Below, piece by piece: positions 1,114 through 17,536 of a stretch of DNA of 64,000 nucleotides. The stretch is from Schmidtea nova (lineage: Eukaryota): contig CM097882.1 in the NCBI GenBank assembly GCA_044892505.1, forward strand, positions 25,730,001-25,794,000. Direction: 5' to 3'. The first letter of the stretch is position 1. Each line of letters starts with the position of its first letter. The translations under genes and the position numbers were made by a program. The notes below the pieces were generated by a model. The model had not been told where the DNA came from, searched no databases, and saw only the letters and a program-made list of their open reading frames with translations.

Positions 1114-1384
1114 GTGTTGTGTCGGACCAATTGATGACGGAATTCTTTTTTCCTGTGTTCAGTGCTGAAAGAGGTGCTGTTATGTGAGATGCGTTTTTAA
1201 TGAATCTATGGCAGAAGTTGACGATGCCTAAAAAGCTACGTAGTTGTGTCACGGTGGTTGGCAGGGAAAAGCTGCGGATTACGTCAAGTCTTTCGGGGAA
1301 AGGTTCACAACCAGTAGATGAAAGTATATGGCCAAGGAATCTGACGCGTTCTTGAAACAAGCTACATTTGTTTATGTTTATCTG
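1114..1384 (-). pseudogene. 3' part of the RT / RT-RNase H connection of Gypsy element A, truncated at about 1114
   Basis: KCSLFQERVRFLGHILS...LRSFLGIVNFCHRFIKNASHITAPL. Removing element B and one TSD copy restores the in-frame read RHNLQININKCSLF with 14291 onward. Confidence 0.9.
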
Positions 1385-2427
1385 TGTTAGAAGATGGGCG
1401 TAGAATAAAGGTTTTAAAATTAAAACATTATACAGTAGGAAATGGAAGATACAGGATAAATATACATGTGGATCAGATGGCAATGACAATTCAATAATCA
1501 ATGGAAAATATCAAATTCAACGACATTATATGATGATATTTTACTGTTGATCTCATTTGACTTTTCTTTTATTATATGATGACTATCTGGCAATTTTTAT
1601 TTTTATGGGATAATTTTATTTTGTTTCTGTTAATAAAATTTGTTGACAATTAATTTTTGTAATGACAATTTATCAGCATGACAATTTATAATTTGACAAT
1701 TTATCATTTGTGATATTGCGAACATTTATTGGCATTTTTATGGTGATGGACAAAATTTTATATAATTTTGAAAAAATATTTTGTGTTGAAAATATTTTAT
1801 GTAAATTAATTTTTTAACTATTTGGAAAATGGATTATATTTTCATTTATATTTTAATATTTTAATTCAATAAATAATAATAATAATAAAATAAATAAATA
1901 AATAGTACAGGTTGTTTAAATAAATTAAAAAAATAAATAAATTACTGTTTGTTTAAATAAATTATATTTCTGACCTACAAGGTCAGGAAAATGAAATAAT
2001 ATCTCAAGGTTAAAAAATAATTTTGAAAACAATTCTGTTTTGAAAACAACTCTATTTTCAAAAACAATTTCAATCAACTCAAGAGGCAAAATAACAATCA
2101 TTATTGACAGATTAAGTGCCTTAAAATTTAGTATATAAACTGACTGATTTTTCAGTTAAATGACCCATAAAATCTTTGCGTAAGAAGAATTTCATAGTTG
2201 TTATCGACTATTGAAATAATAATTTCGAGCATACAAGATATCGAGCTCAGAAGGCATTCACACATACACACGCATACATATATATTTACACATTATAGGA
2301 ATAACATTGTGAATCTGTAATATTTTTTAGGTAATTTGTATTTGTTGTATTTGAATAAAATCTTTGAACCAGTATTATCTTATTTATTTATATAAGATAC
2401 CAAGTTGAGATTCTGGGAACCTCAACA
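1385..2427 (+). repeat. 5' LTR of element B
   Basis: Starts TGTTAGAAG, ends CCTCAACA; matched 13248-14290 wherever compared by eye. Confidence 0.97.
2132..2359 (+). promoter_or_regulatory. Putative LTR promoter and processing signals: TATATAAA (2132), Inr-like TCAGTT (2152), splice-donor-like AG|GTAATT (2331), AATAAA (2354)
   Basis: Motifs in this order, with counterparts in the diverged solo LTRs near 18.5-18.9, 21.6-22.0 and 28.6-28.9 kb. TATA-Inr spacing is shorter than canonical. Confidence 0.5.
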
Positions 2428-2429
2428 TT

Positions 2430-2447
2430 TGGTGCCGCGAACCGGGA
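2430..2447 (+). promoter_or_regulatory. Primer-binding site, tRNA-Phe-like
   Basis: TGGTGCCGCGAACCGGGA 2 nt after the 5' LTR; complementary to a tRNA 3' end ...UCCCGGUUCGCGGCACCA. The tRNA identity (Phe) is inferred. Confidence 0.7.
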
Positions 2448-2628
2448 ATAAATTAAAGTGAATAAATCAATTTGGGGGATAGGAATTGAGATCAGAGGGA
2501 TATTATATATTGGGATTATTTATAAATATAAAAAATTATTGGACATTAAATTTTTGAGATAATAGTGAAGTAACATTGATAATCAACCCGAAATAATTTA
2601 TAATTTGAGAAACCGAATAGTATATAGA

Positions 2629-5600
2629 ATGGCGCAAAATAATGAAAATAATGATAATATAAGACATATTTGGCAAAATAGAGATGAGGATAATAATAAC
2701 CGTAACATTTTGATAAAAACATTACCCATAGAGCATTATAGGGGTGAACCTGAAAAATTTGATGATTTTTTCGATGAAATTGCTCAGTGTGCAGAAGCTT
2801 GTGGATGGACAAGAGATGAATTAAAAAGAAGAATACCGTTATATTTAAAGGGGTATGCATTACAAGCATATAATAATTTAGAGTGTAAGGGTAGAAATTG
2901 GGAAGATTTAGTTGATAATTTGAGAGGTGAAATAGTAATCGAGCGAGATTTACAAAAGATAAATGTACAAATATTTCGAAATAGATATCAAGGGAGCAGA
3001 GAAACAATTGGAGAGTATGTTTATAATTTAACTGAATTAGCTCGAAAGGCCTTCGGTGTGGGAGAACATACTACAAGACTAATTGAGGATCAATTTTGGA
3101 ATGGTATCCAAAAACATCTATACAAATCTTTGATCATGGTAGAATATGAGAATTTAAATGAGTTAGTACAAAAGGCACGAAGAATTGAAGCAATACAGAG
3201 GGATAGATTTAGTTCTGTGATTGATGCAGTAGAAATTCAGGAAATTGAAAAAGAAAAAACCAAGTCAAACGATAAAGATGATAACATTCCTTGGGAGGAG
3301 ATGAAGCAGCTATATTTGAATTATGTTAAAAATAGGAGAAAGACTAGTCCAAGTCCGAGTCGTAGTTTTGACAACAATAATAGATTTAATAGTCCGAGAG
3401 GCAGATCGAATAATCGAAATAATGATCATTTGGAATTTAATGATAAAAATACTTATGTGGGGAATTATAGAGATAATTATTATAATCGAGATAGTAGGGG
3501 TCGAGGAAACTATAATAGAGATGGTCGTTTTAGAAATAGTGGGTACAATAGAAATAATCGTTTTAACGATAATCCAAGCAACAGGAGTAATTATTTCGAA
3601 TATACCCGAACAAATCGATTTACCGAAAATAGAAATAGTGATAATAGAAACAATTTCGAAATAAATAGAAACAATTATAGAGGACGGAGAATGAGTCCCA
3701 CTCGACAAACTTTTGATAGAGATAGACGATCGAGTCCGTTTAGTAACGATGGGAGAGATAAAGTTAATTTTCGCGGAGAAATAAGATGCTTCAACTGTCA
3801 GAAATATGGCCATATGGCAAAAGCATGTAAAAATGCACGAGTCGAATCTCCAAATAGAGTTCAATTTAAGAAAGAGCCTGAAATTAAACAAATAAATAGT
3901 ATGGAGGTTAAAGAGTCGAATAATGAAATTGAGATGCTGAGAGATGAATTACAAGAATTTAAAACAAAATATGAGAGATTAATCGAAAGAAATAAAATTA
4001 ATGTTTCGATAAACGAATTTAAAACTTTCACCAATGAAGTTAAGATAGATAATGAAGAGTTGAGACAGCAAAGAGAAAGAGATGAACAGTTTTTTGCAGA
4101 ATTAGATAGACAGAATACTTTGAGACAGGAATTAGAGGAATCCTTGAGAAATTATCTAGTTGATGATAATGAAGTTTTGAGAATATTAAATAAAATTCAT
4201 GTGGAAGGAATAAATCTGGAGAATCTGAGAAATTTGATACCATCATTAGTAAAGAAACAAAGAGTAACCCAATTATTTGAATTGGAAATTGAAATTAAAG
4301 AGATGTTGAAATGTTATAGCGATTATGTTCGAAAAAACGAAAGATTACAGGAGCCACTAGAAATTACATTAGAAACAAGTGATAAAGATACACCTAGAAT
4401 AATTGTCCATAAACAAGGGGTACATGCGTGTACAAAGGTAAAAAAGATGAAACAAATAGCCAGAGCAAATTGGTATGCCGATCTAGGAATAAATGATGAG
4501 ATAATATTGCATTTTTCTGGGATGAAGATGCAAAACGAAGATTGTTTAATGGATTATGGGATAAACGCCAGTGAAAATAACGTCATAACAGTTTCAATAA
4601 AAAGTGGTTTAGGAGTAGCCAACAAGAAAATTTCAAAACTAAGCCCAGACAAAGAAGATAAGGAAGAGACCGCGAGAGGAGCTATAGGAGGTATAATGAC
4701 CTTTACGTTGGAGGAAAAAAGACTCCCAAAATTAAAGAATAATAACATTGCTGAAAAACTGAAAGAAATTGCAAACAAAACGTCAACGAAAGATAAGGAC
4801 GTTGATGTACTAGTAGAGTTAATAAAAATCATGTATCCTAAAGTATATGAACACACAGGATCTCCATCATTTATTATTAATATATATAAAAAAATTGAAG
4901 TTATAGAGTCAGAGATTAAAGGATTAACAAAGCAAGAAGCGGATGAAGGCGAAGTTTTAGATATTTTATTTACTACTGGAATTGATGAAAATAGAATTAT
5001 AACAGCAATTGCGTATCTTATTTATAGATCAGAGGATGTTCTGAAGATGAAACCAAAGAAATTAAGTAAAATTGCTAAAAGGATATTTACAAGGTTACAA
5101 AATAATGTGATACCTTGGATACATGCAAATGGAGGATGGGAAATCTTAAGAGGAAAAGATGAATCAATGGAGATAAGCGCAGAACAACAATGTACTAATG
5201 ACAAAGAAATTGAAAGAAAATTGAAGAAAATAATAGATAAAACGACGAAGAAATCAGGGAAAAGTGATCATAAATCATTTATATCCACAATAATAGTGAT
5301 GATAGCAATATTATTAAGTATATTAAAAGGGTGTACGGGCATGATAGCATACGACTGTCAGAACCCGAAATGGGGACAAAAATATTCACTATTAGATATA
5401 GAAAACTGTCCAGAAGCGAACCCGATTAACTTAATTACAACCGAACCTAGATTATATCATGTGTATCAGGAATCAGATTTTATACATACCGAAGCGAGAG
5501 AATGTATAATAAGATATTCAGAAGAGGCTTTTGTATGTCACAGCATAGCGCGGACAATCTTAAGGCCCTCATTTACACCGGATACTATTACGATAACTCC

Positions 5601-8600
5601 ACAAGAATGTGAACATGCATTTCAATCAAAAAAGATAAAAATACATGAAATTGAATTAAAAGCACAGATAGGTGCACGTGTAAAACAACGAGTTGATGTA
5701 GTTGGATGGTCTTCACATGGTGGATATTGTCAAGGTGGAGAATACAAGATATGGGGACATACTATAAAAAATGCCGTTGTGAGAAGAGAATATATTGTTG
5801 AACTTAGACAATTTAAGGCATCTTTCGATAGCGTAACACAAAAGATGATGACATACCCATTCTGTACATCAAAAGAAATAAGCTGTGATACCGGAGAATC
5901 AATTGTAATATATAAAGTCGATTCGTATGAATGTCCTTTGACCAAATTAAAATCACTAAAATTCATGACTATAAGAGGCAAACAATTTACAAACTCAGAG
6001 TCAACAAAAATAAAAGATAGAAAAAGAAAGACAATAGTAGTTCAAGAAAAAGATACACCAACGATATACATGACAGAATCTTCAGGAGAAGCAATGAGAT
6101 TTGTAAGCAAAGGAGAAAGTGTAAAGTGTGGGAGATCAATAATACAGACCAATTATAAGGGTATATATCTAAGCAAAGATGAAATAAAAGATGCAAAACT
6201 AAAAGTCAATAAATACGATGTCAAACTTTCATCCTACTTTAATAATAAGATAGATTACTTTTACCATCACCAACTAATGCAACTAGATAGAGTATACCAA
6301 GAAACTATTATAAATGATTGTAAGCTTAATCGAGAAATCTTAAGAACAAAGATGGCACTAGCTATCACAAACCCAGACTTAATGGCCCCAATGCTTTTTT
6401 CAGAAAGAGGCGCTTTTGCAAGAGTTGTAGGGGAAGTCATACAAACATTTCAATGTAAACCAGTCAGTGTAGCACTAGCCACAAACAAACAATGTACAAA
6501 CGAATTACCTGTCATATATAAAGGAGAAAGAGTTTACCTACAACCAATTACACGAATACTAACAGACAAAAACTATACACCAAAGAAGATTGATAAATGT
6601 ACAAATTTATTGGATCCTTTATATCAACTAGATGATGAAACATGGATAACAATGTCAGATAAGAAGGTAGCAATAACACCTTTGAAACTTGAAATGACAG
6701 AATTAGATAAAAAACTCGAATTCTTCGAAGTAAATGATTTTGATAGCAATGGGTTATATTCAAAAGAAGCTATAGAAAGCGCAAGAAAACACTTATTATT
6801 CCCCAATGAAAAAGAAAAGGTATTAACAGTTATCGCCAGTAAAATAATAGAGAACAGCCATGATGGAAAATATAACTTTGATATACTTCTATCAAAAGAA
6901 CACTTTAAAAAGGTAGTTTACAAAGTTTTATATAGTATTTGGGGATATTTTGCAATCTTAGGTAACACATTCTCAACTATACTTGGCATTTACTATTCAG
7001 TTGCATTACTGAAAATGATATGTTCATCATTAGTATCACTTAGACAATTAAGGCAGGTATTTGGTAATTCATTCAAAATGTTGGCTTGTTTATGTCCATT
7101 TGTTGCGAAATACTTGATAACAGCAAAACATGATAAAGATATTAAAAGGATAATTAGAAAAACGGAAGAAGACAGATTAATGGACGAAAATGTAAATGAA
7201 GAAAATAATCATACAAGTGAGTCTGAAAACATTGAACAACCACAAGGGGGACCATACATCATACATATGGAGCAATTGAAAAGTCTACAAAACGAGATTG
7301 AAGTCAAAATACCTGTGGAAAAACATAGTGGTAATATATTCACAAAAAAACCTAAAAGAATATATGGATGCTATGGAATAGAAGAAGGAGAAGAAGCAAA
7401 TGGAATGAGACCAAGAACTCAAATAAAGATAAATAATCAAACTATAAATGCGTTAGTAGACACAGGTGCAGCAGCATCATTAATAGAAAATGAGTTATTA
7501 ACTGAACAACAACGTCAAAGCATTAGACCGACAAATGATGAACTAGTATCCCTTTCTTCACACACAATACCTATCAGAGGAAATATCGAACTTACAGTTC
7601 ATTTCGAAAATCAAAGAATAAACCATGTGTTTAGGGTAGCAAATATATGCCAAAGAAAATGTATACTAGGTATAGACATCCTTAAAAAATTGAAAGGGTA
7701 TGTAATAGATCTATCAGATAATAAAATAAAAAGAAAGATAAATAAGACCCACCGAAGTGATATAAACATTTACGCAATGGAAGAATTTGAATTGGAATAC
7801 GAAAGTGATAATATTATACCTATAAAAGTAAATGTTCAAAGCGAAGATACATACGTTTTCGAACCAAATACTAACATCGCAAAAAATAACAATATTATGG
7901 TAGCAAATGAATGTGTAATGCCAAAGAAAGGTGTAATCCCAGTAAGAATTGCAAACTTTGAGAATAAAAAGGTTAAAATTCATAAAGGTACAAAGTTGGG
8001 ACAATTATCTAAATGTGATTTGAACAAACATGAAATAGGAGAATTATACATCATGGGAAATGACCTCGAAAAGAGCTTCGAACAAAATTCAAAAAATAAT
8101 ATTAAATTCTATGATAAAATTAAAATAACTAATAATTATTTGACCGCAACACAACTACAACAGTTACAAACCTTAATTGATGAGTATAATGATGTTTTTG
8201 CCAAACATGAATTTGACCTAGGAGATACTGATATTATAAAACATGTAATTGATACAGGAAATGCCAGACCATTAAAACAAAGACCTTATGTAACTCCTTA
8301 TAAACTTAGGGAAGAAATAAAAAGACAAATCAACGAATTAAAAGGAGCAGGAGTAATTAGACAAAGTTTTTCACAATGGGCATCACCTATAGTACCAGTT
8401 AGAAAGAAAGATGGTGAGATAAGGATGTGCATCGATTATAGAAAATTAAACGAAGTTACAGTTAAAGATTCATATCCGTTCCCTAAAGCACAAGAACAAT
8501 ATGATAAACTTAGAGGTGCTAAATATTTTACAGTTATAGACGCAAATAAGGGATATATGCAAATTCAAATAGAAGAAGGAGATATAGAAAAATCAGCATT

Positions 8601-11550
8601 CGTGATTGAAGATGAGTTATATGAATTTTTAAGATTACCATTCGGGATGGTAAATGCACCAGCAACATTTCAAAGATTGATGAACACCATACTAATAGAT
8701 GTTCAACACTGTGCCGTTTATATGGATGACATACTGATAGCATCAAAAACATTCGAAGGACATCTTCAAGACATAAAAAATGTATTAGAAAGATTTCGAA
8801 AATCTAAACTAAAAATCAAACCTACCAAATGTAAATGGGCAGAATCGTCTGCATTATATTTAGGACATATTGTATCAATTGATGGCATCATTCCAAATCC
8901 AGATAAGATTAAAACAGTACAACAGTTTCCTATTCCAAAAAATGTAAAAGAAATACAAGGATTCTTAGGTTTAACAGGATACTATCGAAAATTCATAGAA
9001 AATTATGCTAAAATTGCAGCCCCATTAATTGAATTAACAAAGGGAGTAAAAACAAAAGAAGATGGGAGAAAAACACAAATAGTACAAAAAATAAATAAAG
9101 ATAATGGAAAGTCACAAAAAATATGGACGCAACGACAACAAACTGCTTTTGAGCAACTCAAAGAAAAATTAGTAACAGCTCCAATATTAAGATACCCGGA
9201 TTTCACAAAACAATTCATCATTATGACGGATGCTAGTGGAAAAGCTGTAGGAGCAGTCTTAGGTCAGGAAGAAGAAAAGGGCAAAGATTACGTCATAGCA
9301 TATGCAAGTAAAACATTAAAAAGTGCGGAAACCCGATATTCAACTATAGAAAAAGAATGTTACGCAATAATGTTCGCACTTAGACAATTCAAACAATACA
9401 TATATGGATCAGAAGTATTAATACGAACGGACCACAAACCATTAGAAGGATTATGGAAACATAAAGATACATCAAGTAGATTACTAAAATGGGCAATGAA
9501 AATACAAGATATGCATGTAAAAATTATTTATAAACCTGGTCGAATAAACAAAAACGCAGACGCATTATCACGAATACCAGAATTAAGCGTATTAGAAATT
9601 TTTGCCGTGGTGGCTGAAAATCCAATAGATATATACCAAGAACAAATAGACGATTCTGAACTTAGTAAAGTAAGAGAGGAAGTTATTAAAGGAAGAAATA
9701 ACAAATTTAAATTAAGCAAAAATGTATTAATGATGGAAGATATTACAGGTAAACAACTTATAGTAGTACCACAGAAGTTGAAACAAATACTTTTATTACA
9801 ATATCACGATGGTGCACTCGGAGGACATCTTTCAGCTAGAAAAACAGCAAATAGATTATTACAAAAATACTATTGGGAAAATCTTAAAAATGATGTAAAG
9901 CAATGGTGTAACTCATGCACAATATGTGCCACTCGAAAAAATACGGGAACAAGAACAAAAGCCCCACTCCATCCAATACCGGTAATAAATTCGCCAATGG
10001 AATTATGCGCTATGGATTTTTTATGCAAATTACCCGTCACAATTAAAGGTAACAGACATATCTTAGTCTTCAGTGATTATTTTACAAAGTGGGCAGAAGC
10101 TTTTCCGACTAAAGATGAGACCGCAGAAACAGTAGCCAAATTATTAACAGAAAAAATAATATTTAGAATTGGGACACCAAAGAAGTTACTCACAGACAGA
10201 GGAAAGAATTTCATGAGTGAAATAATTCAAAGACTAGCAAATATCTTTGACATACAGAAAATAAATACGACTGCATATCACCCTCAAACAGATGGCCTAG
10301 TTGAACGATTTAATGGCACACTATTAAATAGGTTATCAGTTTTTGTAAACAAAAATCAAAACGACTGGGATGAGTATGTAAATCAATGTACCTACATTCA
10401 CAATATAACCCCTAATGAGACAACAGGATACTCTCCATATTATTTAATGTATTTACGTGAACCAATTACACCAATTGATACAACATTTGAACCGAAAATA
10501 TCACAATACTTAGATACCCCGGACTATGTCACTTTAATGCAAGAAAGACTACAAGAAGTTTACAAAATAGCTGATCTAAAAATTAAATTTCGCCAAGAAC
10601 AATATAAAGATGGATATGACAAAACAACAAAACCCCATAATTTCAAAGTAGGAGATAAGGTTAGACTTATGTCACCTCAAATAGGAAAAGGTAAAACAAA
10701 GAAATTAGCAAGACCATATAAAGGTCCATATGAAGTTGTAAAATTAACGCATGAAAACTTACATTTACAAAAACACAAAAATGATGACCCAATTATTGTC
10801 CATGTCAATAGATGTAAACTAGCAGAGAACGATTTACCAACAATAAGATCACACAGATACAATCTAAGGTCCAAACCGCAAAATATATTGATGATATCAA
10901 TAACCATTCTCACAATTATCAACATAGTCAATTCAGAATTAATTAACAATGATGATGTTACAATAAAAATAAATTACAATAACATTATAATCGTTGATAT
11001 AAAGAAAGACCTTATAAACCAGTTCTATTTAAGATTTACCAATGGTTCATACACTAAAATTGTAGAAAAAACGAAAGATAATAGAAAAAGTTATATCGCC
11101 AAATATGAAAATTTACAAGCTAATACAATATACTATTTTTGCTTAGAAACACCAATATGGGGATTTAAAAAGACTCAATGTCAAATATTAAAAACCGGAA
11201 ACCAAAAACCTACCACACCCATCACCAGATACATACCTCAAAGAATATTTAAAAATCCAAAACAACCTAAAATCTCAAAATCCCAAAAATGGATTAAAAT
11301 ACCAATAAATAAGCCCTCAACAATAATAAACAACTGGGAGGAATTCCAAAATTTATACCATCATCAACAAAAACCGTTATATAAAAGATGGCCGTTTTAT
11401 ATTATAATATTCAGTATAATATTACTAACAATAATAATAATATGGATGAGCACGCAAACCTATAGAAAGTATAAGTGGAAGAGACAGCGTTATCGGAGTC
11501 ATCTCGTCCAATACGTCCCAGGGAGATATACTTTATCTACATTATGTTAA
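2629..11550 (+). CDS. Single polyprotein: Gag(CA, CCHC NC)-Ubl-Bcl-2-like-Env (class III fusion glycoprotein)-PR-RT-RH-IN-membrane protein. True ATG at 2629
   Basis: CFNCQKYGHMAKAC (3787); LHFSGMKMQNEDCLMDYGI; PWIHANGGW; IAYDC...YSLLDIENC; LVDTGA (7453); YMDD (8719); TDASGKAVGAVL; HDGALGGH...CNSCTIC; MDF/TDRG/VERFN; GPY; two hydrophobic signal-like segments and TM segments. Confidence 0.95.
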   Translation: MAQNNENNDNIRHIWQNRDEDNNNRNILIKTLPIEHYRGEPEKFDDFFDEIAQCAEACGWTRDELKRRIPLYLKGYALQAYNNLECKGRNWEDLVDNLRGEIVIERDLQKINVQIFRNRYQGSRETIGEYVYNLTELARKAFGVGEHTTRLIEDQFWNGIQKHLYKSLIMVEYENLNELVQKARRIEAIQRDRFSSVIDAVEIQEIEKEKTKSNDKDDNIPWEEMKQLYLNYVKNRRKTSPSPSRSFDNNNRFNSPRGRSNNRNNDHLEFNDKNTYVGNYRDNYYNRDSRGRGNYNRDGRFRNSGYNRNNRFNDNPSNRSNYFEYTRTNRFTENRNSDNRNNFEINRNNYRGRRMSPTRQTFDRDRRSSPFSNDGRDKVNFRGEIRCFNCQKYGHMAKACKNARVESPNRVQFKKEPEIKQINSMEVKESNNEIEMLRDELQEFKTKYERLIERNKINVSINEFKTFTNEVKIDNEELRQQRERDEQFFAELDRQNTLRQELEESLRNYLVDDNEVLRILNKIHVEGINLENLRNLIPSLVKKQRVTQLFELEIEIKEMLKCYSDYVRKNERLQEPLEITLETSDKDTPRIIVHKQGVHACTKVKKMKQIARANWYADLGINDEIILHFSGMKMQNEDCLMDYGINASENNVITVSIKSGLGVANKKISKLSPDKEDKEETARGAIGGIMTFTLEEKRLPKLKNNNIAEKLKEIANKTSTKDKDVDVLVELIKIMYPKVYEHTGSPSFIINIYKKIEVIESEIKGLTKQEADEGEVLDILFTTGIDENRIITAIAYLIYRSEDVLKMKPKKLSKIAKRIFTRLQNNVIPWIHANGGWEILRGKDESMEISAEQQCTNDKEIERKLKKIIDKTTKKSGKSDHKSFISTIIVMIAILLSILKGCTGMIAYDCQNPKWGQKYSLLDIENCPEANPINLITTEPRLYHVYQESDFIHTEARECIIRYSEEAFVCHSIARTILRPSFTPDTITITPQECEHAFQSKKIKIHEIELKAQIGARVKQRVDVVGWSSHGGYCQGGEYKIWGHTIKNAVVRREYIVELRQFKASFDSVTQKMMTYPFCTSKEISCDTGESIVIYKVDSYECPLTKLKSLKFMTIRGKQFTNSESTKIKDRKRKTIVVQEKDTPTIYMTESSGEAMRFVSKGESVKCGRSIIQTNYKGIYLSKDEIKDAKLKVNKYDVKLSSYFNNKIDYFYHHQLMQLDRVYQETIINDCKLNREILRTKMALAITNPDLMAPMLFSERGAFARVVGEVIQTFQCKPVSVALATNKQCTNELPVIYKGERVYLQPITRILTDKNYTPKKIDKCTNLLDPLYQLDDETWITMSDKKVAITPLKLEMTELDKKLEFFEVNDFDSNGLYSKEAIESARKHLLFPNEKEKVLTVIASKIIENSHDGKYNFDILLSKEHFKKVVYKVLYSIWGYFAILGNTFSTILGIYYSVALLKMICSSLVSLRQLRQVFGNSFKMLACLCPFVAKYLITAKHDKDIKRIIRKTEEDRLMDENVNEENNHTSESENIEQPQGGPYIIHMEQLKSLQNEIEVKIPVEKHSGNIFTKKPKRIYGCYGIEEGEEANGMRPRTQIKINNQTINALVDTGAAASLIENELLTEQQRQSIRPTNDELVSLSSHTIPIRGNIELTVHFENQRINHVFRVANICQRKCILGIDILKKLKGYVIDLSDNKIKRKINKTHRSDINIYAMEEFELEYESDNIIPIKVNVQSEDTYVFEPNTNIAKNNNIMVANECVMPKKGVIPVRIANFENKKVKIHKGTKLGQLSKCDLNKHEIGELYIMGNDLEKSFEQNSKNNIKFYDKIKITNNYLTATQLQQLQTLIDEYNDVFAKHEFDLGDTDIIKHVIDTGNARPLKQRPYVTPYKLREEIKRQINELKGAGVIRQSFSQWASPIVPVRKKDGEIRMCIDYRKLNEVTVKDSYPFPKAQEQYDKLRGAKYFTVIDANKGYMQIQIEEGDIEKSAFVIEDELYEFLRLPFGMVNAPATFQRLMNTILIDVQHCAVYMDDILIASKTFEGHLQDIKNVLERFRKSKLKIKPTKCKWAESSALYLGHIVSIDGIIPNPDKIKTVQQFPIPKNVKEIQGFLGLTGYYRKFIENYAKIAAPLIELTKGVKTKEDGRKTQIVQKINKDNGKSQKIWTQRQQTAFEQLKEKLVTAPILRYPDFTKQFIIMTDASGKAVGAVLGQEEEKGKDYVIAYASKTLKSAETRYSTIEKECYAIMFALRQFKQYIYGSEVLIRTDHKPLEGLWKHKDTSSRLLKWAMKIQDMHVKIIYKPGRINKNADALSRIPELSVLEIFAVVAENPIDIYQEQIDDSELSKVREEVIKGRNNKFKLSKNVLMMEDITGKQLIVVPQKLKQILLLQYHDGALGGHLSARKTANRLLQKYYWENLKNDVKQWCNSCTICATRKNTGTRTKAPLHPIPVINSPMELCAMDFLCKLPVTIKGNRHILVFSDYFTKWAEAFPTKDETAETVAKLLTEKIIFRIGTPKKLLTDRGKNFMSEIIQRLANIFDIQKINTTAYHPQTDGLVERFNGTLLNRLSVFVNKNQNDWDEYVNQCTYIHNITPNETTGYSPYYLMYLREPITPIDTTFEPKISQYLDTPDYVTLMQERLQEVYKIADLKIKFRQEQYKDGYDKTTKPHNFKVGDKVRLMSPQIGKGKTKKLARPYKGPYEVVKLTHENLHLQKHKNDDPIIVHVNRCKLAENDLPTIRSHRYNLRSKPQNILMISITILTIINIVNSELINNDDVTIKINYNNIIIVDIKKDLINQFYLRFTNGSYTKIVEKTKDNRKSYIAKYENLQANTIYYFCLETPIWGFKKTQCQILKTGNQKPTTPITRYIPQRIFKNPKQPKISKSQKWIKIPINKPSTIINNWEEFQNLYHHQQKPLYKRWPFYIIIFSIILLTIIIIWMSTQTYRKYKWKRQRYRSHLVQYVPGRYTLSTLC

Positions 11551-11761
11551 ATTAAAATACCCAATCATAAACGATCTATTATATTATCCAATAATATTTA
11601 AAAAATTATTTTACCCAATAGAAACTGATCAAATTTTACTATATAAATGTCCAATAATTTATAAAAATCACCCATATCTAAATAGATATTATATTGCAAA
11701 TAGGGGTAATCTCTATCTTTGCATTAATATATATATTCTATTAATTATTCTTTTTAGAAAA

Positions 11762-13360
11762 ATGAATTCAAAAGAGCCATCAACTTCGAACCCAACCAAT
11801 CCAAAAACAATGAAATACACACAAATATACACATGCAAGACATACAAACACCCACTAACATTCTACAAAGCATTACAAAATAACATAAAGGCAGATGGAG
11901 AAGAACTCACAATTAGAAAATACCCACATCAAGTATGTATACCCAACGAGTTCAAGGTAGACACAGAAGAAAGAGAGATGTACCTAGTTAAGTTTAACAT
12001 AGCAAAGAGAACAAAACTTAGAGACATTATAGGCTATTTTGAACCAAGCCAGAATGTAGATAAAGATACCAAAGAAGGCAAAAGAATCCCACATAGGATA
12101 GTGATTCACGCCACGAAAACAGAACTTACAATAAAATTCAAAGAAACAACGTTAGCCACCATAAGTAAAGCAACAGCGGTGTTTAAGACAATAAAATATA
12201 GAAAAATGGCGAATGATTTTAATAACATCACGATACAAATTCATAATATACCTTGCGTAATGGCTATAGAAATCCTATATGTTCCAAAAATAAACAATCC
12301 TTTTGAAAAATCGGAAATAATTATGGCTGAGATCAGGATGAATGAAGATTTTATAGAAAACAAAACACCATTCACAAAGAAAGTATTGACGATCGAGGAA
12401 AGAAGAGAGAAAATAGTTTTTATGGATGTAAAAACAGTAAAAGATTATAATCATCAAATAAAACCCATAGATATTCATATCAGAAAATATAATGGAGACT
12501 GTGTATTTAAAACGAAAATTACCCCAAGGACTAAAATACAAATGGACAAAATAGAGAAAGATTCAATATTGGGGAATATGGATGAATTCGAAGCACTAAT
12601 AGAAATAAAAAAACATTTATACAATAAAATAATTATCGGATTTGACATTATGGAAAAATTAAGAAGTATATACATCAGTTTAGATGATGTTTTAGGAATA
12701 AGAGAAATGTCAAATAATGTCTATACGAAAACTTTTGTAAAGAATGTCCCGGAAGATAAGATAAGATTATCTAATCTTGCTTTCCAGATCATCAAACTCA
12801 AAAGCGATTTACGGAGAAATAAAAAACTCAACGACATTCTACTTAAACCAGAGCCATTTAGCGTACAAGACACCTGTATGATAGTCAGGATTCTATACTT
12901 GATAACTGAAAACGACTGGGAAAATTACATAGAACAGCAAATGAAAGAAATAACTAAGAAACCCAGAAATGAGAGCACAAGCAATCAAACGAATCAAACA
13001 GAGGATGAGGACGAAGTGCAATTCATCAAAGAAGAGCGACCAAATGTTGAACTTATGGACACAATAGAAGATGAACTAGGACCAGAGCCAATGATCACTA
13101 TAGAGGACACACAAGAAGAAAAATATATCACATTAATATATGATAAAAACATTAAAATGACAACAGTAACAATAGATGAAGATGAAATAGATGTATTCTT
13201 TGTAAAAAAAGGTTATGAGGACATAACCTTAACGCCCCAGGGAGTAATGTTAGAAGATGGGCGTAGAATAAAGGTTTTAAAATTAAAACATTATACAGTA
13301 GGAAATGGAAGATACAGGATAAATATACATGTGGATCAGATGGCAATGACAATTCAATAA
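11762..13360 (+). CDS. Accessory ORF2 of element B (532 aa, unknown function); its 3' end lies inside the 3' LTR
   Basis: Long open frame with the element's codon bias, preceded by a splice-acceptor-like TTATTCTTTTTAG ending at 11757; stop at 13360 lies inside the LTR that starts at 13248. Confidence 0.85.
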   Translation: MNSKEPSTSNPTNPKTMKYTQIYTCKTYKHPLTFYKALQNNIKADGEELTIRKYPHQVCIPNEFKVDTEEREMYLVKFNIAKRTKLRDIIGYFEPSQNVDKDTKEGKRIPHRIVIHATKTELTIKFKETTLATISKATAVFKTIKYRKMANDFNNITIQIHNIPCVMAIEILYVPKINNPFEKSEIIMAEIRMNEDFIENKTPFTKKVLTIEERREKIVFMDVKTVKDYNHQIKPIDIHIRKYNGDCVFKTKITPRTKIQMDKIEKDSILGNMDEFEALIEIKKHLYNKIIIGFDIMEKLRSIYISLDDVLGIREMSNNVYTKTFVKNVPEDKIRLSNLAFQIIKLKSDLRRNKKLNDILLKPEPFSVQDTCMIVRILYLITENDWENYIEQQMKEITKKPRNESTSNQTNQTEDEDEVQFIKEERPNVELMDTIEDELGPEPMITIEDTQEEKYITLIYDKNIKMTTVTIDEDEIDVFFVKKGYEDITLTPQGVMLEDGRRIKVLKLKHYTVGNGRYRINIHVDQMAMTIQ

Positions 13361-14290
13361 TCAATGGAAAATATCAAATTCAACGACATTATATGATGAT
13401 ATTTTACTGTTGATCTCATTTGACTTTTCTTTTATTATATGATGACTATCTGGCAATTTTTATTTTTATGGGATAATTTTATTTTGTTTCTGTTAATAAA
13501 ATTTGTTGACAATTAATTTTTGTAATGACAATTTATCAGCATGACAATTTATAATTTGACAATTTATCATTTGTGATATTGCGAACATTTATTGGCATTT
13601 TTATGGTGATGGACAAAATTTTATATAATTTTGAAAAAATATTTTGTGTTGAAAATATTTTATGTAAATTAATTTTTTAACTATTTGGAAAATGGATTAT
13701 ATTTTCATTTATATTTTAATATTTTAATTCAATAAATAATAATAATAATAAAATAAATAAATAAATAGTACAGGTTGTTTAAATAAATTAAAAAAATAAA
13801 TAAATTACTGTTTGTTTAAATAAATTATATTTCTGACCTACAAGGTCAGGAAAATGAAATAATATCTCAAGGTTAAAAAATAATTTTGAAAACAATTCTG
13901 TTTTGAAAACAACTCTATTTTCAAAAACAATTTCAATCAACTCAAGAGGCAAAATAACAATCATTATTGACAGATTAAGTGCCTTAAAATTTAGTATATA
14001 AACTGACTGATTTTTCAGTTAAATGACCCATAAAATCTTTGCGTAAGAAGAATTTCATAGTTGTTATCGACTATTGAAATAATAATTTCGAGCATACAAG
14101 ATATCGAGCTCAGAAGGCATTCACACATACACACGCATACATATATATTTACACATTATAGGAATAACATTGTGAATCTGTAATATTTTTTAGGTAATTT
14201 GTATTTGTTGTATTTGAATAAAATCTTTGAACCAGTATTATCTTATTTATTTATATAAGATACCAAGTTGAGATTCTGGGAACCTCAACA
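13248..14290 (+). repeat. 3' LTR of element B
   Basis: Same termini and length as 1385-2427; preceded by a short purine tract AGGGAGTAA. Confidence 0.97.
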
Positions 14291-15480
14291 TCTGTAAGTT
14301 GTGACGGTTCAATATATCAAGGATCGTGTGTAAATCGTTTTTGTGGCTTTCTCGATCCGGGGACGCTATGATGATATCGTCAAGGTATGCGAAAGTGTGA
14401 GGGACATCGCGAAAAATTGTGTCCATGAAACGTTGTGGGGACTGAGCTGCGTTTCTAAGACCAAAAGGCATGAACATGTATTCAAAATTCCCAAATGGTG
14501 TAGTGACAGCCGTTTTGTGGACGTCGTCCGTATGGATGGGAAATTGGTGGTATGCTTTCGAGAGGTCTATAGTTGAGAACACTGTAGATTGTGAAAAGCG
14601 TGTTATTAAATCTTTAATGAGTGGCATTGGGTAGGCGTCGTGGACTGTTACTTGGTTGAGCTGTCGATAATCTCCACAGGGTCTGAATGACCCGTCTTTT
14701 TTTGTTACTACGTGTATTGGCAAAGCCCATGGTGAAGATGAACGACGTATAATGCCTGCGTTTTCTAGACTAACAAATTCAGCTTTGACTGCGTCGAGTT
14801 TCGTGGAAGAGAGAGGTCTGGCTCGATTGTGTTGTGGTATGCATGGTAATGTGTGAATATAGTGAGTCGATAGGGTAGTGGGTGGTATGGTATCGGATTT
14901 AGTTATGAGGTTTGGATATTTGGTTGAAATTAATTTGATCATGTCATCGATCGTATCTAGATTGGCTGATTGGTCGATGTCCAACGTGTTTTTATCGTTT
15001 TCCATCGTGGAATCTTGATGAATCGAGTTGAGTTGTGTCGGTGTAAATGTCTGCGTTGAAATTGATGTTACATTTGACGATGAAATTGTCGGTATATTGG
15101 CAATGTCTTGTTTTACAGTGAACAACTTACGATTTTTGCAATCTACCATGATGGATTCGTTGCTTAAAAAATCGGAGCCTAATATTGGGTGGATAGTGTC
15201 TGCTATGTGGAAGGTGTGAGGGAAAGTTGAGTTTAATGTTGATATTGTGAATGAGAGTTTTTTTGTTCCCAAAAATTGGATCGGTGTGCTGTTAGCGGCC
15301 AAGGCAGTGAACGAAGATTTGAAGTCTGGTGTGAAAGTTGTTGGAAGGATTGAAAATGACGAGCCCGAATCTATGAGAAAATGAATTGATGAGCTGGAGT
15401 CGAAGTCTGCTTCAACAGTGAAGATACTGTTGATCGCAAGGACGCTGCCTGAAAATCCAGGGTTGACAGACAGTGGCGCT
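14291..15480 (-). pseudogene. Pol (protease + RT) of element A, 5' portion
   Basis: FLIDSGSSFSILP, ILGSDFL, SSSPWALPIHVVTKKDGSFRPCGDYRQLN, PFGLRNA, YLDDIII. The ORF-track tail (MLRFPESQ...) is read-through into the LTR. Confidence 0.9.
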
Positions 15481-15490: not shown

Positions 15491-16389
15491 GGGAGAATTG
15501 AAATTGTTTTTGTCGTATGATTTATTTGAGGAACGGTTTACAAAAGTGCAACCTGAAAGGCATTTTTGTGCATGTATACCGAGATATTGTGATAGATGCA
15601 AATAGAAATGATCCTCAAAGTGGAAGGAGGGTTTGGCCATGAACATCCTATATGGCATGTTCTTGCGTCGGATGAGAATTTCTTGTGAAAAAAACAAGTC
15701 AGAGGGGGGAAAGAATTTGGTTTATCGTTTCTTTGGGTGTGTGTAGTTAGCTGAGAGGAGTTGAGTATCGCGTCGACTGTTTTTGTCAGAGAAGATATCT
15801 GTTCCTGTAATGAAGGGTCGGAAACTGATGCGATGGTAGTTGGTGCGTTTCGGATGGGGGGTCGAGTAACCAACTTATCAGCAATTTTTGCAAGGTGAAA
15901 AGGATCATCGGAATCCACGACGAGAAGTGAGGTCTGGATGTGATGTGGAAGAGCTGTTAAAAATTGATGGCATAAGAGAGCAGTGTTTTTTGATAAACCG
16001 GTGTGGGCGGCCTCGAGTTCGCGTACTAGTTGCGATAAAAAGGATGATGGGGGTTGACCGGCGTATGGGGTGGGTTTTGATAACTTTTCGATCGCTGAAG
16101 TGCGCGTGGGTGAATATTTTTTTTCTATGACCGCTTTGATTGATTCATAAAGGGTTTCTGAGTTTAATGCGTCAGCTATTTGTGAGCCTAATTCTGACAT
16201 TAACTCGTCGGGTATTGCATCCAGCAGAAGATCTTGCCTAGACTTGGGATTGGCTCTAGTGCGCGATTCAAAAATGCGGAACCAAGATGATGGTGTGCCG
16301 TCTGCGTCTAAAAATATCAGTTGAGTGCGACCTATGGACGTGGGAGGGTTATGATCATTGTTAGTTTTGGCACCGCCTCTTGCCCGCAT
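15479..16389 (-). CDS. Gag of element A with two CxxHxx(F/Y)xxxAxxCxxxC knuckles (second one frameshifted)
   Basis: CFFHKKFSSDARTCHIGCSW; the second knuckle CIYH / QYLGIHAQKCLSGCTF is split across frames and ends SPKKN*. Confidence 0.85.
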
Positions 16390-16829
16390 GAAGAGTGTTA
16401 TTATTGCGTTTGTTGGGACTGAAAGAGGATCTGTGATGGGAACTCCGTTATTTAAAATAAAGAAGTCGTTGTGTTCTATTAAAAAAAACGTTTAATATCG
16501 TTAAAAAAGTTTGTCGTGGTAATTTTAACTGAGTGAATAATATTTTTGTGGCGTACAGTGATGTTGAGTAAGCCGTCATGAAGGGTAAATGGTTGTGAAC
16601 AGGTAGAGGAAACTGTTGTAGTGTTGGTTATAGGAGTATGAAAATTATTATTAAAATAATTATTAAAATTTTTATTGAATATTTTATTAAAATTATTATT
16701 AATATAAATGGAGTAATTAGATGAATTTAAATATTCACATAATAAATTCAAAAAGCTTACGTTTGTCACTTCTGACACCAATTGTAGGAATGCTAAAAGC
16801 AAATAAGATTTTATTAATAGAAATTGATC

Positions 16830-17261
16830 TCCAATTGACAAGTTGGTCTTTGGCAACCGGAAATCCTGACCGATGATAACAAGAGTTGAAATGAGCAAGC
16901 TCCATGACAGTCCGTATTGATTGATTTCTGGTGCTGGCGAATAATCGTTTAATCGAGATTGATTGTGATCCAATGTATTGATTTGTAAATTTTTTGAATT
17001 ATACATTTCAGATTTGTCTGGATAGTATATTAATATTGATCCAGTTGTTGTCAAGCATCTTCCAGTTTGTACGGCTTCTTTACGCATTCCAGCAGCGAAA
17101 CATTTCTGCAATCTACGGAACTGGCAATTGTTTCTTCTTTGAATATCGACTACACAATCTCCTCTAGAGTAGAACTGATAATTGTTGTCATTTGATGAAA
17201 ACGAGTCGCTGTGGATGTCTTGAGTGAATGGGTATATCGAATCATTGTTAACAGCTTGCAT
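16830..17261 (-). pseudogene. Degenerate nuclear receptor fragment (second C4 finger plus T-box, possible LBD start), NR2-like
   Basis: RGDCVVDIQRRNNCQFRRLQKCFAAGMRKEAVQTGR. Two zinc-ligand Cys are replaced and the first finger is not recognisable. Confidence 0.75.
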
Positions 17262-17472: not shown

Positions 17473-17503
<31 letters not shown>

Positions 17504-17536
17504 TTAATATTATTAATATTACTGTTCATTTTTCTT

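What the first reader, a model, noticed from the sequence alone, without database searches (positions are those of the whole stretch)
2629..11550. Virus-like LTR element with a single Gag-Ubl-Bcl2-Env-Pol-membrane-protein polyprotein
Seen: one stop-free frame containing, in order, capsid and CCHC knuckle, a ubiquitin-like domain, a Bcl-2-like domain, a signal-like hydrophobic segment, a Cys-rich glycoprotein with TM, then PR, RT, RNase H, integrase, a second signal-like segment, a small ectodomain and a TM anchor. Known: env-bearing Ty3/Gypsy elements (errantiviruses) normally place env in a separate ORF 3' of pol. Inference: this polyprotein would be threaded through the ER and cut by both signal peptidase and the retropepsin, as in flavivirus or alphavirus polyproteins. 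It could represent an undescribed enveloped retroelement lineage with its own anti-death module. I do not recall this architecture being described.
Basis: partly seen in the sequence, partly recalled or inferred. Interest (0 to 1): 0.96.

Follow-up and report, generated by a model that had tools for sequence, protein, structure and literature searches.

The report
Compact Burro-like enveloped retroelement, already-described layout
The giant reading frame is real and belongs to an intact, very recently inserted virus-like LTR element, but its striking layout (capsid, ubiquitin-like, Bcl-2-like, envelope protein and polymerase in one frame) was already published for the "Burro" retroelements of planarian flatworms.

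Summary
Window 2629-11550 is one stop-free frame of 2973 codons. It encodes Gag/CCHC, a ubiquitin-like domain, a Bcl-2-like domain, a hydrophobic signal, a class III chuvirus/gB-like fusion glycoprotein with a TM, PR, RT, RNase H and IN. It ends in a second signal-ectodomain-TM module.

The frame lies inside a complete 12.9 kb Ty3/gypsy-type element (1385-14290). The element has 100% identical 1043-bp LTRs, a 4-bp target duplication, a PBS-like site, a PPT and a second ORF (11762-13360) derived from an ISG20-like exonuclease.

Eight divergent relatives from four metagenome assemblies carry the envelope gene upstream of pol. Seven have the post-integrase membrane module and four the exonuclease-type ORF.

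The novelty claim fails. Arkhipova & Yushenova 2019 (PMC6431247) describe planarian Burro elements with the same in-frame order: Gag, SUMO/ubiquitin-like, BCL2, env, PR, dUTPase-like, RT-RH-IN. Chary & Hayashi 2026 (PMC13524379) report GAG-ENV-POL elements with gB-type Env in flatworms, nematodes and bryozoans.

This copy is a compact new member. I did not find the C-terminal membrane glycoprotein module or the exonuclease ORF in the texts I could read. ER threading with signal-peptidase cleavage is plausible but untested.

The parts
1381..1384 (.). Left copy of the 4-bp target-site duplication (TCTG)
   Evidence: Same four bases at 14291-14294.
1385..2427 (+). 5' LTR, 1043 bp, TG...CA ends
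   Evidence: 100% identical to 13248-14290. The 3' end is confirmed by three other LTR remnants in the window that end on the same bases.
2430..2447 (+). PBS-like 18-mer starting TGG, 2 nt after the LTR
   Evidence: Read from the sequence. The tRNA was not identified; there are no tRNA genes in the window.
2629..11550 (+). Single polyprotein ORF, 2973 aa plus stop (stop-free from 2605)
2629..3858 (+). Gag: capsid-like region, N/R-rich basic linker and one CCHC knuckle (3784-3834)
   Evidence: zf-CCHC at 23.2 bits. dArc2 capsid E=0.0027. Homology to gag ORFs of relatives, one of which hits Retrotrans_gag. Linker composition.
3859..4380 (+). Helix-rich, charged linker between Gag and the Ubl; no family assignment
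   Evidence: No Pfam hit. Aligns with relatives as part of the long Gag-to-Ubl alignment.
4381..4623 (+). Ubiquitin-like domain without a C-terminal di-glycine
   Evidence: Alignment A4. Profile hits to ISG15, ubiquilin and ubiquitin. Pfam ubiquitin in 3 of 6 members and Rad60-SLD in 2 of 6. The window's own copy scores only E=0.1.
4696..5163 (+). Bcl-2-like domain; the significant similarity covers the BH1-BH2 part, aa 775-839
   Evidence: The fold was not confirmed: the AF2 single-sequence model had pLDDT 36.6.
5278..5334 (+). Hydrophobic segment 1: signal or signal-anchor of the glycoprotein, about 45 aa after the Bcl-2-like domain
   Evidence: Hydropathy 2.37. Basic N-flank. The equivalent segment precedes G in every relative.
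5284..7236 (+). Envelope glycoprotein: class III fusion protein of the chuvirus/mononegavirus type, with TM core at 6979-7035
   Evidence: PF24664 E=6e-87. AF2 model pLDDT 58.8. Foldseek gives herpesvirus gB at E=1e-13 and chuvirus-like G proteins at E=2e-35. The ectodomain has 18 Cys.
7408..7701 (+). Retropepsin (D-T-G present)
   Evidence: RVP E=8e-9. Motif seen.
7768..8031 (+). Possible degenerate dUTPase-like region between PR and RT
   Evidence: Pfam dUTPase E=0.023, below the cut-off. Burro has a dUTPase-like motif at the same position.
8398..8874 (+). Reverse transcriptase (Y-M-D-D present)
   Evidence: RVT_1 E=2e-35. Ty3 Gag-Pol 7q5b E=6e-108 over RT-RH-IN.
9124..9510 (+). RNase H
   Evidence: RT_RNaseH and RT_RNaseH_2, E about 1e-36.
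9766..10875 (+). Integrase: H2C2 zinc domain, catalytic core and C-terminal domain with GPY
   Evidence: About 197 aa after the core align with all relatives.
10885..10941 (+). Hydrophobic segment 3: internal signal or signal-anchor after integrase
   Evidence: A counterpart is present in all 7 relatives that reach this far.
10942..11394 (+). Small presumed luminal domain (about 150 aa, 2 Cys, 1 N-x-S/T); no detectable homologue
11395..11547 (+). Hydrophobic segment 4 (TM anchor, 11395-11451) and a short basic tail
   Evidence: Hydropathy 2.69. 7 K/R in the C-flank.
11762..13360 (+). ORF2, 532 aa, an accessory gene derived from an ISG20-like DEDDh exonuclease. It runs 113 nt into the 3' LTR. 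Two of the five catalytic positions are not conserved in this copy.
   Evidence: Homologous to post-pol ORFs of L001, L004 and L002. Alignment A5. The family profile hits ISG20L2 at E=3e-17. RNase_T in the L005 ORF. The window copy has no Pfam hit of its own.
13239..13247 (+). Polypurine tract-like run abutting the 3' LTR
13248..14290 (+). 3' LTR
14291..14294 (.). Right copy of the target-site duplication (TCTG)

Best explanation
This is an intact, very recently integrated endogenous retrovirus-like element of the Ty3/gypsy (Metaviridae) type. It belongs to the group with env between gag and pol, of which the planarian Burro elements are the described example. It is a compact 12.9 kb member.

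Likely mechanism. The parts are shown; the cleavages, topology and roles below are inferred.
1. The full-length RNA is translated into one polyprotein.
2. Gag, the ubiquitin-like domain and the Bcl-2-like domain stay in the cytosol.
3. The first hydrophobic segment targets the chain to the ER and is cut by signal peptidase. This would leave Gag-Ubl-Bcl-2 tail-anchored or free.
4. The class III glycoprotein folds in the lumen and is anchored by its TM.
5. PR-RT-RH-IN follows on the cytosolic side as a giant tail, and the retropepsin releases the pieces.
6. After integrase, a second signal-anchor puts a small, fast-evolving type I membrane protein into the membrane.
7. ORF2, a degenerate ISG20-like exonuclease homologue, is a separate accessory product.
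8. The Bcl-2-like and Ubl modules probably interfere with host cell-death and ubiquitin pathways, as already proposed for Burro.
For: Element:
- Identical LTRs, TG..CA ends, TSD, PBS-like site and PPT.
- Clean insertion: the two flanks are the two halves of an older element's RT, meeting at the same residue.
- Four further LTR remnants in the window.

Domains:
- Pfam.
- Ty3 Gag-Pol E=6e-108.
- PF24664 E=6e-87 and a gB/chuvirus-G fold.
- Ubl profile.
- Bcl-2 profile.

Family:
- Eight relatives (P0001-P0004; L005-L007; P0005 and others) carry G upstream of PR-RT-RH-IN.
- Three of them are also single Gag/Ubl...G...Pol frames (L003, L005, L007).
- All seven that reach the end of pol have the signal-ectodomain-TM module.
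- ORF2 homologues follow pol in four loci.

Topology: charge bias of +3, -3, +5, -4 across the four segments.

Literature: Burro layout; GAG-ENV-POL elements with gB-type Env in flatworms; BURRO1 is described as abundant, active and transcribed.
Against: - No direct sequence comparison with Burro or any named element was possible, so membership rests on domain order and on the AT-rich (29.5% GC) metazoan context.
- The element lacks Burro's MATH_TRAF_C, BIR, ankyrin and Smc motifs and is less than half its size.
- Bcl-2 is below Pfam's gathering score. Nothing matched in 1.8 or 5.8 billion proteins, and the fold prediction failed.
- The window's own Ubl copy is the most divergent of the six (14-20% identity).
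- Charge bias in the relatives is weaker or mixed, and one relative has extra hydrophobic segments between G and PR.
- No RNA or protein data exist here, so signal-peptidase cleavage, PR sites and one-polyprotein expression are untested.
- In some relatives Gag or Gag-Ubl-Bcl2 is a separate ORF: one by an overlapping frame change, one by a single in-frame stop. Full fusion is therefore not obligatory for the family.
Confidence: 0.8

Rival explanations
1. Env and the terminal membrane protein are made from spliced subgenomic RNAs, as in retroviruses. The in-frame arrangement is then only compact packing and not a membrane-threaded polyprotein. Gag(-Pol) would be read from another message.
For: Retroviruses express env by splicing (established knowledge). 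G carries its own signal, with a Met about 36 aa upstream in the same frame. Relatives tolerate breaks of the frame at the Gag|Ubl and Bcl-2|G borders, which shows these are module boundaries.
Against: In the window, L003, L005 and L007 there is no stop between Gag or Ubl and Pol. A message that skips env would need precise in-frame splicing. PR always lies directly after G's tail, in 2-3 copies in relatives, which fits processing of a fused chain. No splice evidence of any kind is available.
Confidence: 0.25
2. The glycoprotein is an unrelated endogenous RNA-virus fragment (a chuvirus-like EVE), or an assembly chimera, that landed in a gypsy element by chance. The long frame would be an accident or artefact.
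For: Chuvirus-like glycoprotein EVEs are common in invertebrate genomes (PMC7642597, PMC10084718).
Against: The frame is stop-free for 2981 codons at P about 1e-116. The LTRs are identical, with a TSD and a clean empty-site signature. The same G-then-PR-RT-RH-IN order is present in eight divergent contigs from four assemblies at 22-49% G identity.
Confidence: 0.02
3. The Ubl and Bcl-2-like assignments are false positives. The 480 aa between CCHC and the signal would then be a lineage-specific linker of unknown fold.
For: Both are below Pfam gathering scores in the window copy. AF2 gave pLDDT 36.6. There were zero hits in the exhaustive 1.8-billion search and in the 5.8-billion search with the profile.
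Against: Independent libraries agree: Pfam E=7e-5, and the top PDB matches are almost all Bcl-2 family chains. The signal strengthens when family members are added (1.2e-5; about 1e-6 for ISG15). Two of 3 and 3 of 6 members hit the same Pfam families on their own. HHpred found the same two motifs at the same positions in Burro.
Confidence: 0.1
4. The locus is a domesticated or dead provirus whose frame is kept by host selection, for example co-opted Env or Bcl-2, rather than a currently competent element.
For: Env and gag co-option is common (established knowledge). ORF2 has lost two of its five exonuclease catalytic positions.
Against: 100% identical 1043-bp LTRs and an intact TSD indicate an insertion too recent for domestication. 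The PR, RT and IN motifs are all present. The element sits inside another retroelement in a TE-rich stretch.
Confidence: 0.05

Closest known systems
Burro (GYPSM1) giant gypsy-like LTR retrotransposons of planarians (Grohme et al. 2018; Arkhipova & Yushenova 2019, PMC6431247)
   Same: One polyprotein with Gag plus CCHC, a Ubi2/SUMO-like motif, a BCL2-like motif, env in frame between gag and pol with hits to mononegavirus fusion glycoproteins, PR, a dUTPase-like region, RT, RH and IN. Accessory ORFs are present. The host genome is AT-rich.
   Different: 12.9 kb against more than 30 kb, and 2973 aa against 4873-5140 aa. No MATH_TRAF_C, BIR, ankyrin, Smc/AIR1 or midasin motifs; ankyrin repeats occur only in relative L002. 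One CCHC knuckle against two or three. No sequence of Burro was available, so kinship is not measured.
GAG-ENV-POL 'errantiviruses' with HSV/gB-type Env in Platyhelminthes, Nematoda and Bryozoa (Chary & Hayashi 2026, PMC13524379; Sacco et al. 2022, J Gen Virol 103:001739, not held)
   Same: Ty3/gypsy Pol, class III gB-like Env placed between gag and pol, multicopy with LTRs and a tRNA PBS.
   Different: That survey treats GAG, ENV and POL as ORFs and mentions no ubiquitin, Bcl-2 or polyprotein (0 occurrences). My recollection that Sacco et al. describe a continuous gag-env-pro-pol ORF is from memory and unverified.
Anakin and other BEL/Pao or gypsy elements of arthropods with chuvirus-derived glycoprotein (Dezordi et al. 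2020, PMC7642597)
   Same: The same glycoprotein family (PF24664-type, chuvirus-like), captured by an LTR retroelement.
   Different: There env lies downstream of pol as a separate ORF, and in Anakin the backbone is BEL/Pao. Here it is in frame upstream of PR in a Ty3/gypsy backbone.
Bdelloid rotifer Vesta/Juno LTR elements with extra ORF3s (Rodriguez et al. 2017, PMC5408684)
   Same: Post-pol accessory ORFs encoding a DEDD-type 3'-5' exonuclease or small proteins with two TM segments. A dUTPase lies next to PR.
   Different: The rotifer exonuclease is RNase D-like DEDDy; here it is ISG20-like DEDDh. The two-TM module here is fused to the end of Pol rather than a separate ORF.
Polytopic viral polyproteins (flaviviruses, pestiviruses, alphavirus structural polyprotein) and viral Bcl-2 homologues of large DNA viruses
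   Same: What it works like: alternating signal and stop-transfer segments, with host signal peptidase plus a viral protease dividing one chain. A virus-borne Bcl-2-fold protein is also shared.
   Different: No homology. This is a reverse-transcribing element with an aspartic protease. Cleavage and anti-death activity are inferred, not shown.

Membership tests
Ty3/gypsy (Metaviridae) LTR retroelement | LTRs with TG..CA ends, 4-6 bp TSD, PBS next to the 5' LTR, PPT next to the 3' LTR | tested here: met
   The tRNA matching the PBS was not identified.
Ty3/gypsy (Metaviridae) LTR retroelement | Pol order PR-RT-RH-IN, with RT/IN closest to Ty3-type | tested here: met
   Ty3 Gag-Pol 7q5b E=6e-108, ahead of caulimovirus, foamy virus and gammaretrovirus. 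GPY in the IN C-terminal domain. No GyDB/Repbase phylogeny was possible.
Burro-like planarian elements | env in frame between gag and pol in one polyprotein | tested here: met
   against the description.
Burro-like planarian elements | Ubi2/SUMO-like motif followed by a BCL2-like motif upstream of env | tested here: met
   Both are supported at profile level; the window copy alone is sub-threshold.
Burro-like planarian elements | dUTPase-like region between PR and RT | tested here: inconclusive
   Pfam dUTPase E=0.023, 14.9 bits against a cut-off of 22.
Burro-like planarian elements | MATH_TRAF_C, BIR, ankyrin and Smc/AIR1 motifs; total length above 30 kb | tested here: not met
   None of these Pfam families appears in the window polyprotein. 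The element is 12.9 kb.
Burro-like planarian elements | Sequence kinship (RT/IN clade) with Burro1-4/GYPSM1; planarian host | not testable with these tools
   No Burro sequence or flatworm genome is in the collections. The window's proteins are not on record. Only 29.5% GC and a nuclear-receptor exon point to an AT-rich metazoan.
Class III viral fusion glycoprotein (PF24664 Monjiviricetes_fusion; gB / rhabdovirus G / chuvirus G) | Family HMM above the gathering score | tested here: met
   292.5 bits against 27, covering 636 of 653 profile positions.
Class III viral fusion glycoprotein (PF24664 Monjiviricetes_fusion; gB / rhabdovirus G / chuvirus G) | Class III fold, N-terminal signal, C-terminal TM | tested here: met
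   Model pLDDT 58.8, with residues 60-240 at 70-90. gB E=1e-13, prob 1.0 but TM-score only about 0.3. Chuvirus-like G E=2e-35, TM-score about 0.5. Hydrophobic segments. Fusion loops and trimerisation were not tested.
Bcl-2 family | PF00452 above the gathering score | tested here: not met
   23.7 bits against 31.4, E=7e-5.
Bcl-2 family | Significant similarity over BH1-BH2, conserved in relatives | tested here: met
   PDB E=0.0018 alone and 1.2e-5 with profile A2. The invariant columns include the G-G-W of the BH2 region.
Bcl-2 family | Eight-helix bundle fold | tested here: inconclusive
   The single-sequence AF2 model is all-helical over this part, but pLDDT is 36.6.
Bcl-2 family | BH3 binding or regulation of cell death | not testable with these tools
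   No functional data.
Ubiquitin-like (beta-grasp) domain | Family HMM or profile similarity | tested here: met
   Profile A4 against the PDB: ISG15 about 1e-6, ubiquilin 3e-5, mono-ubiquitin 1e-4. Pfam ubiquitin in 3 of 6 members, best 5.9e-5. The window copy is only 12.9 bits.
Ubiquitin-like (beta-grasp) domain | C-terminal di-glycine for conjugation or de-ubiquitinase cleavage | tested here: not met
   None of the six aligned sequences has it at the end of the domain.
DEDDh exonuclease (ISG20/REXO type) for ORF2 | Family similarity | tested here: met
   Profile A5 against ISG20L2 E=3e-17, plus ISG20 and SDN1. RNase_T in the L005 and L004 ORFs. The window ORF2 is homologous to them (E=7e-19).
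DEDDh exonuclease (ISG20/REXO type) for ORF2 | Complete catalytic D-E-D-D-h set | tested here: not met
   In alignment A5 the window copy keeps three of the five positions. It also has no Pfam hit of its own.
Polytopic, signal-peptidase-processed viral polyprotein (works-like only) | Alternating signal and stop-transfer segments with matching charge bias | tested here: met
   Four segments, net charge differences +3, -3, +5, -4. The relatives are weaker.
Polytopic, signal-peptidase-processed viral polyprotein (works-like only) | Actual cleavage by signal peptidase and by the element's protease | not testable with these tools
   Small residues at -1/-3 after segments 1 and 3 were seen by eye only.

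The most novel reading that the evidence does not exclude
The signal-ectodomain-TM module fused to the end of integrase is conserved in position in all seven relatives but unalignable between them. It has 139-375 aa, 2-12 Cys and 1-14 glycosylation sequons. It may be a second, fast-evolving envelope component, for example a receptor-binding or superinfection-blocking partner of the class III fusogen. Together with the ISG20-like ORF it would define a lineage of flatworm-type enveloped retroelements with a richer virion and host-interference toolkit than has been described. The lineage's wide presence in environmental assemblies would then hint at current circulation.
Probability: 0.25. Interest if true: 0.65.

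Novelty: new member of a known kind. Interest (0 to 1): 0.38.

Why it matters
This is a pristine copy: identical LTRs and no stops in 2973 codons. That makes it a convenient compact reference for a rare retroelement design, in which the envelope protein sits inside the Gag-Pol polyprotein alongside captured host-like ubiquitin and Bcl-2 modules.

It adds three things to the published Burro description:
- The design also exists in a form less than half the size.
- The Ubl module recurs in five, and the Bcl-2-like module in two, of the divergent relatives from environmental assemblies.
- Two further conserved parts deserve annotation: a terminal type I membrane protein and an ISG20-like exonuclease ORF.

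It does not open a new category.

Tried and rejected
- AF2 on aa 575-870 without an alignment gave pLDDT 36.6 and was unusable, so I ran no fold search on it.
- Exhaustive phmmer of the Ubl+Bcl-2 region against 1.8 billion representatives gave 0 hits.
- The A2 profile against 5.8 billion proteins gave none at E<=10.
- A metagenome scan with the mid region found no relative.
- An IMG/VR scan with the G alignment found none.
- Exact look-ups of the polyprotein, ORF2 and a flanking FKBP ORF in public assemblies returned nothing on record, so the host is not identified.
- Rfam and tRNA scans of the window found nothing.
- The C-terminal module against Pfam and the PDB gave only sub-threshold noise, such as gp41 constructs at E=0.006 with no stretch passing. 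A profile of two relatives' modules gave nothing.
- Sacco et al. 2022 could not be read.
- I first leaned towards a nematode or rotifer host. The leads were that the best single Bcl-2 PDB hit is Trichuris suis BCL-2, and that one relative has bacterial-type genes beside it. I dropped this as unsupported.
- I considered de-ubiquitinase cleavage of the Ubl, as in cytopathic pestiviruses, and rejected it because no di-glycine is present.
Full report
**1. Observation**

The + strand has one ORF from 2605 to 11550 (2981 codons). With the frame's own composition (43% A, 25% T), the chance of no stop in that many codons is about 1e-116. The frame is real coding sequence.

**2. The element around it**

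- A 1044-nt exact direct repeat lies at 1385 and 13248.
- Three other LTR remnants in the window end on the same bases and are followed by unrelated sequence. The true LTR is therefore 1043 bp (1385-2427 and 13248-14290), with TG..CA ends and 100% identity.
- The element is flanked by a TCTG duplication (1381-1384 and 14291-14294).
- An 18-nt PBS-like site starting TGG lies at 2430-2447, and a purine run abuts the 3' LTR.
- The left and right flanks are, on the minus strand, the two halves of the RT of an older gypsy-like element, meeting at the same residue. This is a clean nested insertion and argues against mis-assembly.
- A second ORF (11762-13360, 532 aa) follows the polyprotein and runs into the 3' LTR.

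**3. Domains of the polyprotein (aa from the ATG)**

*Gag.* There is one CCHC knuckle at 386-402. The N-terminal part resembles the dArc2 capsid (E=0.0027). It is also homologous to gag ORFs of relatives (E=1e-24), one of which hits Retrotrans_gag.

*Pol.* PR 1594-1691, RT 1924-2082, RNase H 2166-2294, IN from 2380. The D-T-G, Y-M-D-D and GPY motifs are present. The best solved relative is Ty3 Gag-Pol (E=6e-108). The backbone is Ty3/gypsy.

*Env.*
- aa 886-1536 match PF24664 (Monjiviricetes viral fusion glycoprotein) at E=6e-87 over nearly the whole profile.
- The ectodomain has 18 Cys.
- An AF2 model built with five homologues from the protein search (pLDDT 58.8; 70-90 over residues 60-240) matches herpesvirus gB (Foldseek E=1e-13). 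It matches chuvirus-like and other mononegavirus glycoproteins even better (E=2e-35).
- It is a class III fusogen of RNA-virus type.

**4. The two host-like modules**

*Bcl-2-like, window copy alone.*
- PF00452 gives E=7e-5 but 23.7 bits, below the gathering score of 31.4.
- The PDB search gives E=0.0018. The top 58 of the 60 listed hits are Bcl-2 family chains, all over aa 775-839. The best is 6V4M, which is Trichuris suis BCL-2 according to PMC7456325.

*Ubiquitin-like, window copy alone.* The Pfam ubiquitin hit is only E=0.1.

*Support from relatives.*
- The pre-Env regions of the related loci are homologous to the window's.
- A three-member alignment of the Bcl-2-like region (A2) has invariant columns in the BH1 and BH2 parts. 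As a profile it hits more than 100 Bcl-xL/Bcl-2 chains, best E=1.2e-5. Two of its three members hit PF00452 on their own.
- A six-member alignment of the Ubl region (A4) hits ISG15 (about 1e-6), ubiquilin (3e-5) and mono-ubiquitin (1e-4). Three of six members hit Pfam ubiquitin and two hit Rad60-SLD/SUMO-like.
- None of the six has a terminal di-glycine, so conjugation or de-ubiquitinase cleavage is unlikely.

*Limits.*
- Single-sequence AF2 of this part failed (pLDDT 36.6).
- Neither giant protein library gave any hit.

I regard both modules as supported by sequence profiles. They are not confirmed by structure.

**5. Membrane segments**

Four strongly hydrophobic segments exist: 884-902, 1451-1469, 2753-2771 and 2923-2941.
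- Their flanking net charges differ by +3, -3, +5 and -4.
- This is the alternation expected if Gag-Ubl-Bcl-2 is cytosolic, G luminal, Pol cytosolic, the last 150-aa segment luminal and the basic tail cytosolic.
- Small residues at -1/-3 follow segments 1 and 3 (read by eye).
- The first segment lies about 45 aa after the Bcl-2-like domain, where Bcl-2 proteins carry their tail anchor. It may therefore serve both neighbours. This is inference.

**6. Relatives**

*What was found.*
- Searching with the Gag-to-Env part found four giant proteins (P0001-P0004, 2099-3761 aa) from two ENA assemblies.
- Searching with G found five more proteins.
- A metagenome scan found three JGI contigs (L005-L007).
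- G identity to the window ranges from 21% to 49%, and Pol identity from 39% to 44%.

*Shared order.* In every case G lies upstream of PR-RT-RH-IN.

*How the frames are arranged.*
- L003, L005 and L007 are single frames of 3761, 3419 and 2693 aa.
- L001 has gag in an overlapping other frame.
- L002 is split into two ORFs.
- In L006 one in-frame stop separates Gag-Ubl-Bcl-2 from G.

*Cargo and shared modules.*
- Relatives carry two or three PR copies, and one has ankyrin repeats. Cargo is variable.
- All seven that reach the end of pol end with a hydrophobic segment, then 139-375 aa with 2-12 Cys and 1-14 sequons, then a TM and a tail. These modules cannot be aligned with the window's.
- ORF2 is homologous to the post-pol ORFs of L001, L004 and L002.
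- The ORF2 family profile hits ISG20L2 (E=3e-17), ISG20 and SDN1.
- The window copy keeps three of the five DEDDh positions and is probably not an active nuclease.

**7. What is known**

- Arkhipova & Yushenova 2019 (PMC6431247) describe the planarian Burro/GYPSM1 elements. These have one 4873-aa polyprotein with Gag and CCHC knuckles, MATH_TRAF_C, a Ubi2/SUMO-like motif, BCL2, env with hits to mononegavirus fusion glycoproteins 'in-frame between gag and pol', PR, a dUTPase-like region and RT-RH-IN, plus BIR and ankyrin. The authors already suggest that it meddles with apoptosis and ubiquitination and may be a provirus.
- Chary & Hayashi 2026 (PMC13524379) report multicopy GAG-ENV-POL Ty3/gypsy elements with gB-type Env in Platyhelminthes, Nematoda and Bryozoa. 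They cite Sacco et al. 2022 for the nematode ones; that paper is not held.
- BURRO1 is described as abundant, active and transcribed in planarian tissues (PMC8532177).
- Exonuclease and two-TM accessory ORFs are known in rotifer LTR elements (PMC5408684).

The window is 29.5% GC, TE-rich and metazoan (a nuclear-receptor exon is present). This fits a planarian from general knowledge, but I could not name the host.

**8. Verdict**

The ER-threading model is coherent but untested. The architecture is not new.

This is a compact, pristine member of the Burro-like / GAG-ENV-POL group. It lacks Burro's MATH, BIR, ankyrin and Smc motifs. A weak dUTPase signal lies at the expected place (E=0.023).

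The terminal membrane-protein module and the ISG20-like ORF are conserved family parts. I did not find them mentioned in the texts I could read, but figures and supplements were not available.

**9. Slips and limits, stated as required**

The motif statements above rest on tool alignments only.
- Consensus lines printed by the alignment tool were not used.
- Later local HMMER searches used other segments of the fetched loci.

Noticed in passing
window 1145-1384 and 14292-14879, minus strand: The element is inserted inside the RT domain of an older, different gypsy-like element (33-37% identity to this element's RT). The two flanks continue each other at the same residue.
   Followed up: partly
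window 18783-18897, 20223-20275, 21602-22019 (around an N run), 28599-29169 (minus), 39459-39505: Remnants of related LTRs at 75-91% identity. Three end on the same terminal bases with no PBS after them, which suggests solo LTRs or truncated older copies. The family has hit this region repeatedly.
   Followed up: partly
window 17378-17523 and 17533-17766: An AT-rich 9-nt-period simple repeat, followed by three tandem copies of a 78-bp unit (91-100% identity) that contains a short palindrome.
   Followed up: no
window 16482-17261 (minus), 15541-16389 (minus), 62692-63759 (minus): Host-like ORFs: a nuclear-receptor fragment (second half of the zf-C4 domain, E=2e-7), a DUF7041 ORF (weak) and an FKBP-type isomerase ORF (E=2e-11). 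These are the only hints that the host is a metazoan.
   Followed up: partly
window 45035-45637 (minus) and 53937-54521 (plus): Further retroelement debris: an RT fragment (E=2e-12) and an integrase C-terminus with a chromodomain (weak). Several 200-350 aa ORFs at 51-62 kb have no Pfam match.
   Followed up: no
window 13248-13360: ORF2 ends 113 nt inside the 3' LTR, and the polypurine tract lies within its coding sequence. The 5' LTR therefore carries the same coding tail.
   Followed up: no
L001 1-7000 (ERZ25039515 contig_69536): The relative in L001 has LTR-like repeats about 15.3 kb apart. On one side it is flanked by fragmented bacterial-type genes (MacB, ABC ATPase, YknX-like, TetR) at 50% GC, and on the other by 29% GC sequence. 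This could be a chimeric contig or a host rich in acquired bacterial genes.
   Followed up: no
L001, L003, L004, L005 polyproteins; L002 second ORF: Relatives carry two or three retropepsin domains: after Env, before RT and after IN. L002 has ankyrin repeats after IN. L005 has three extra hydrophobic segments between Env and PR.
   Followed up: partly
window 3316-3783 (aa 230-385): The Gag linker before the CCHC knuckle is extremely N- and R-rich (23% N, 20% R), so it is low-complexity and probably disordered.
   Followed up: no
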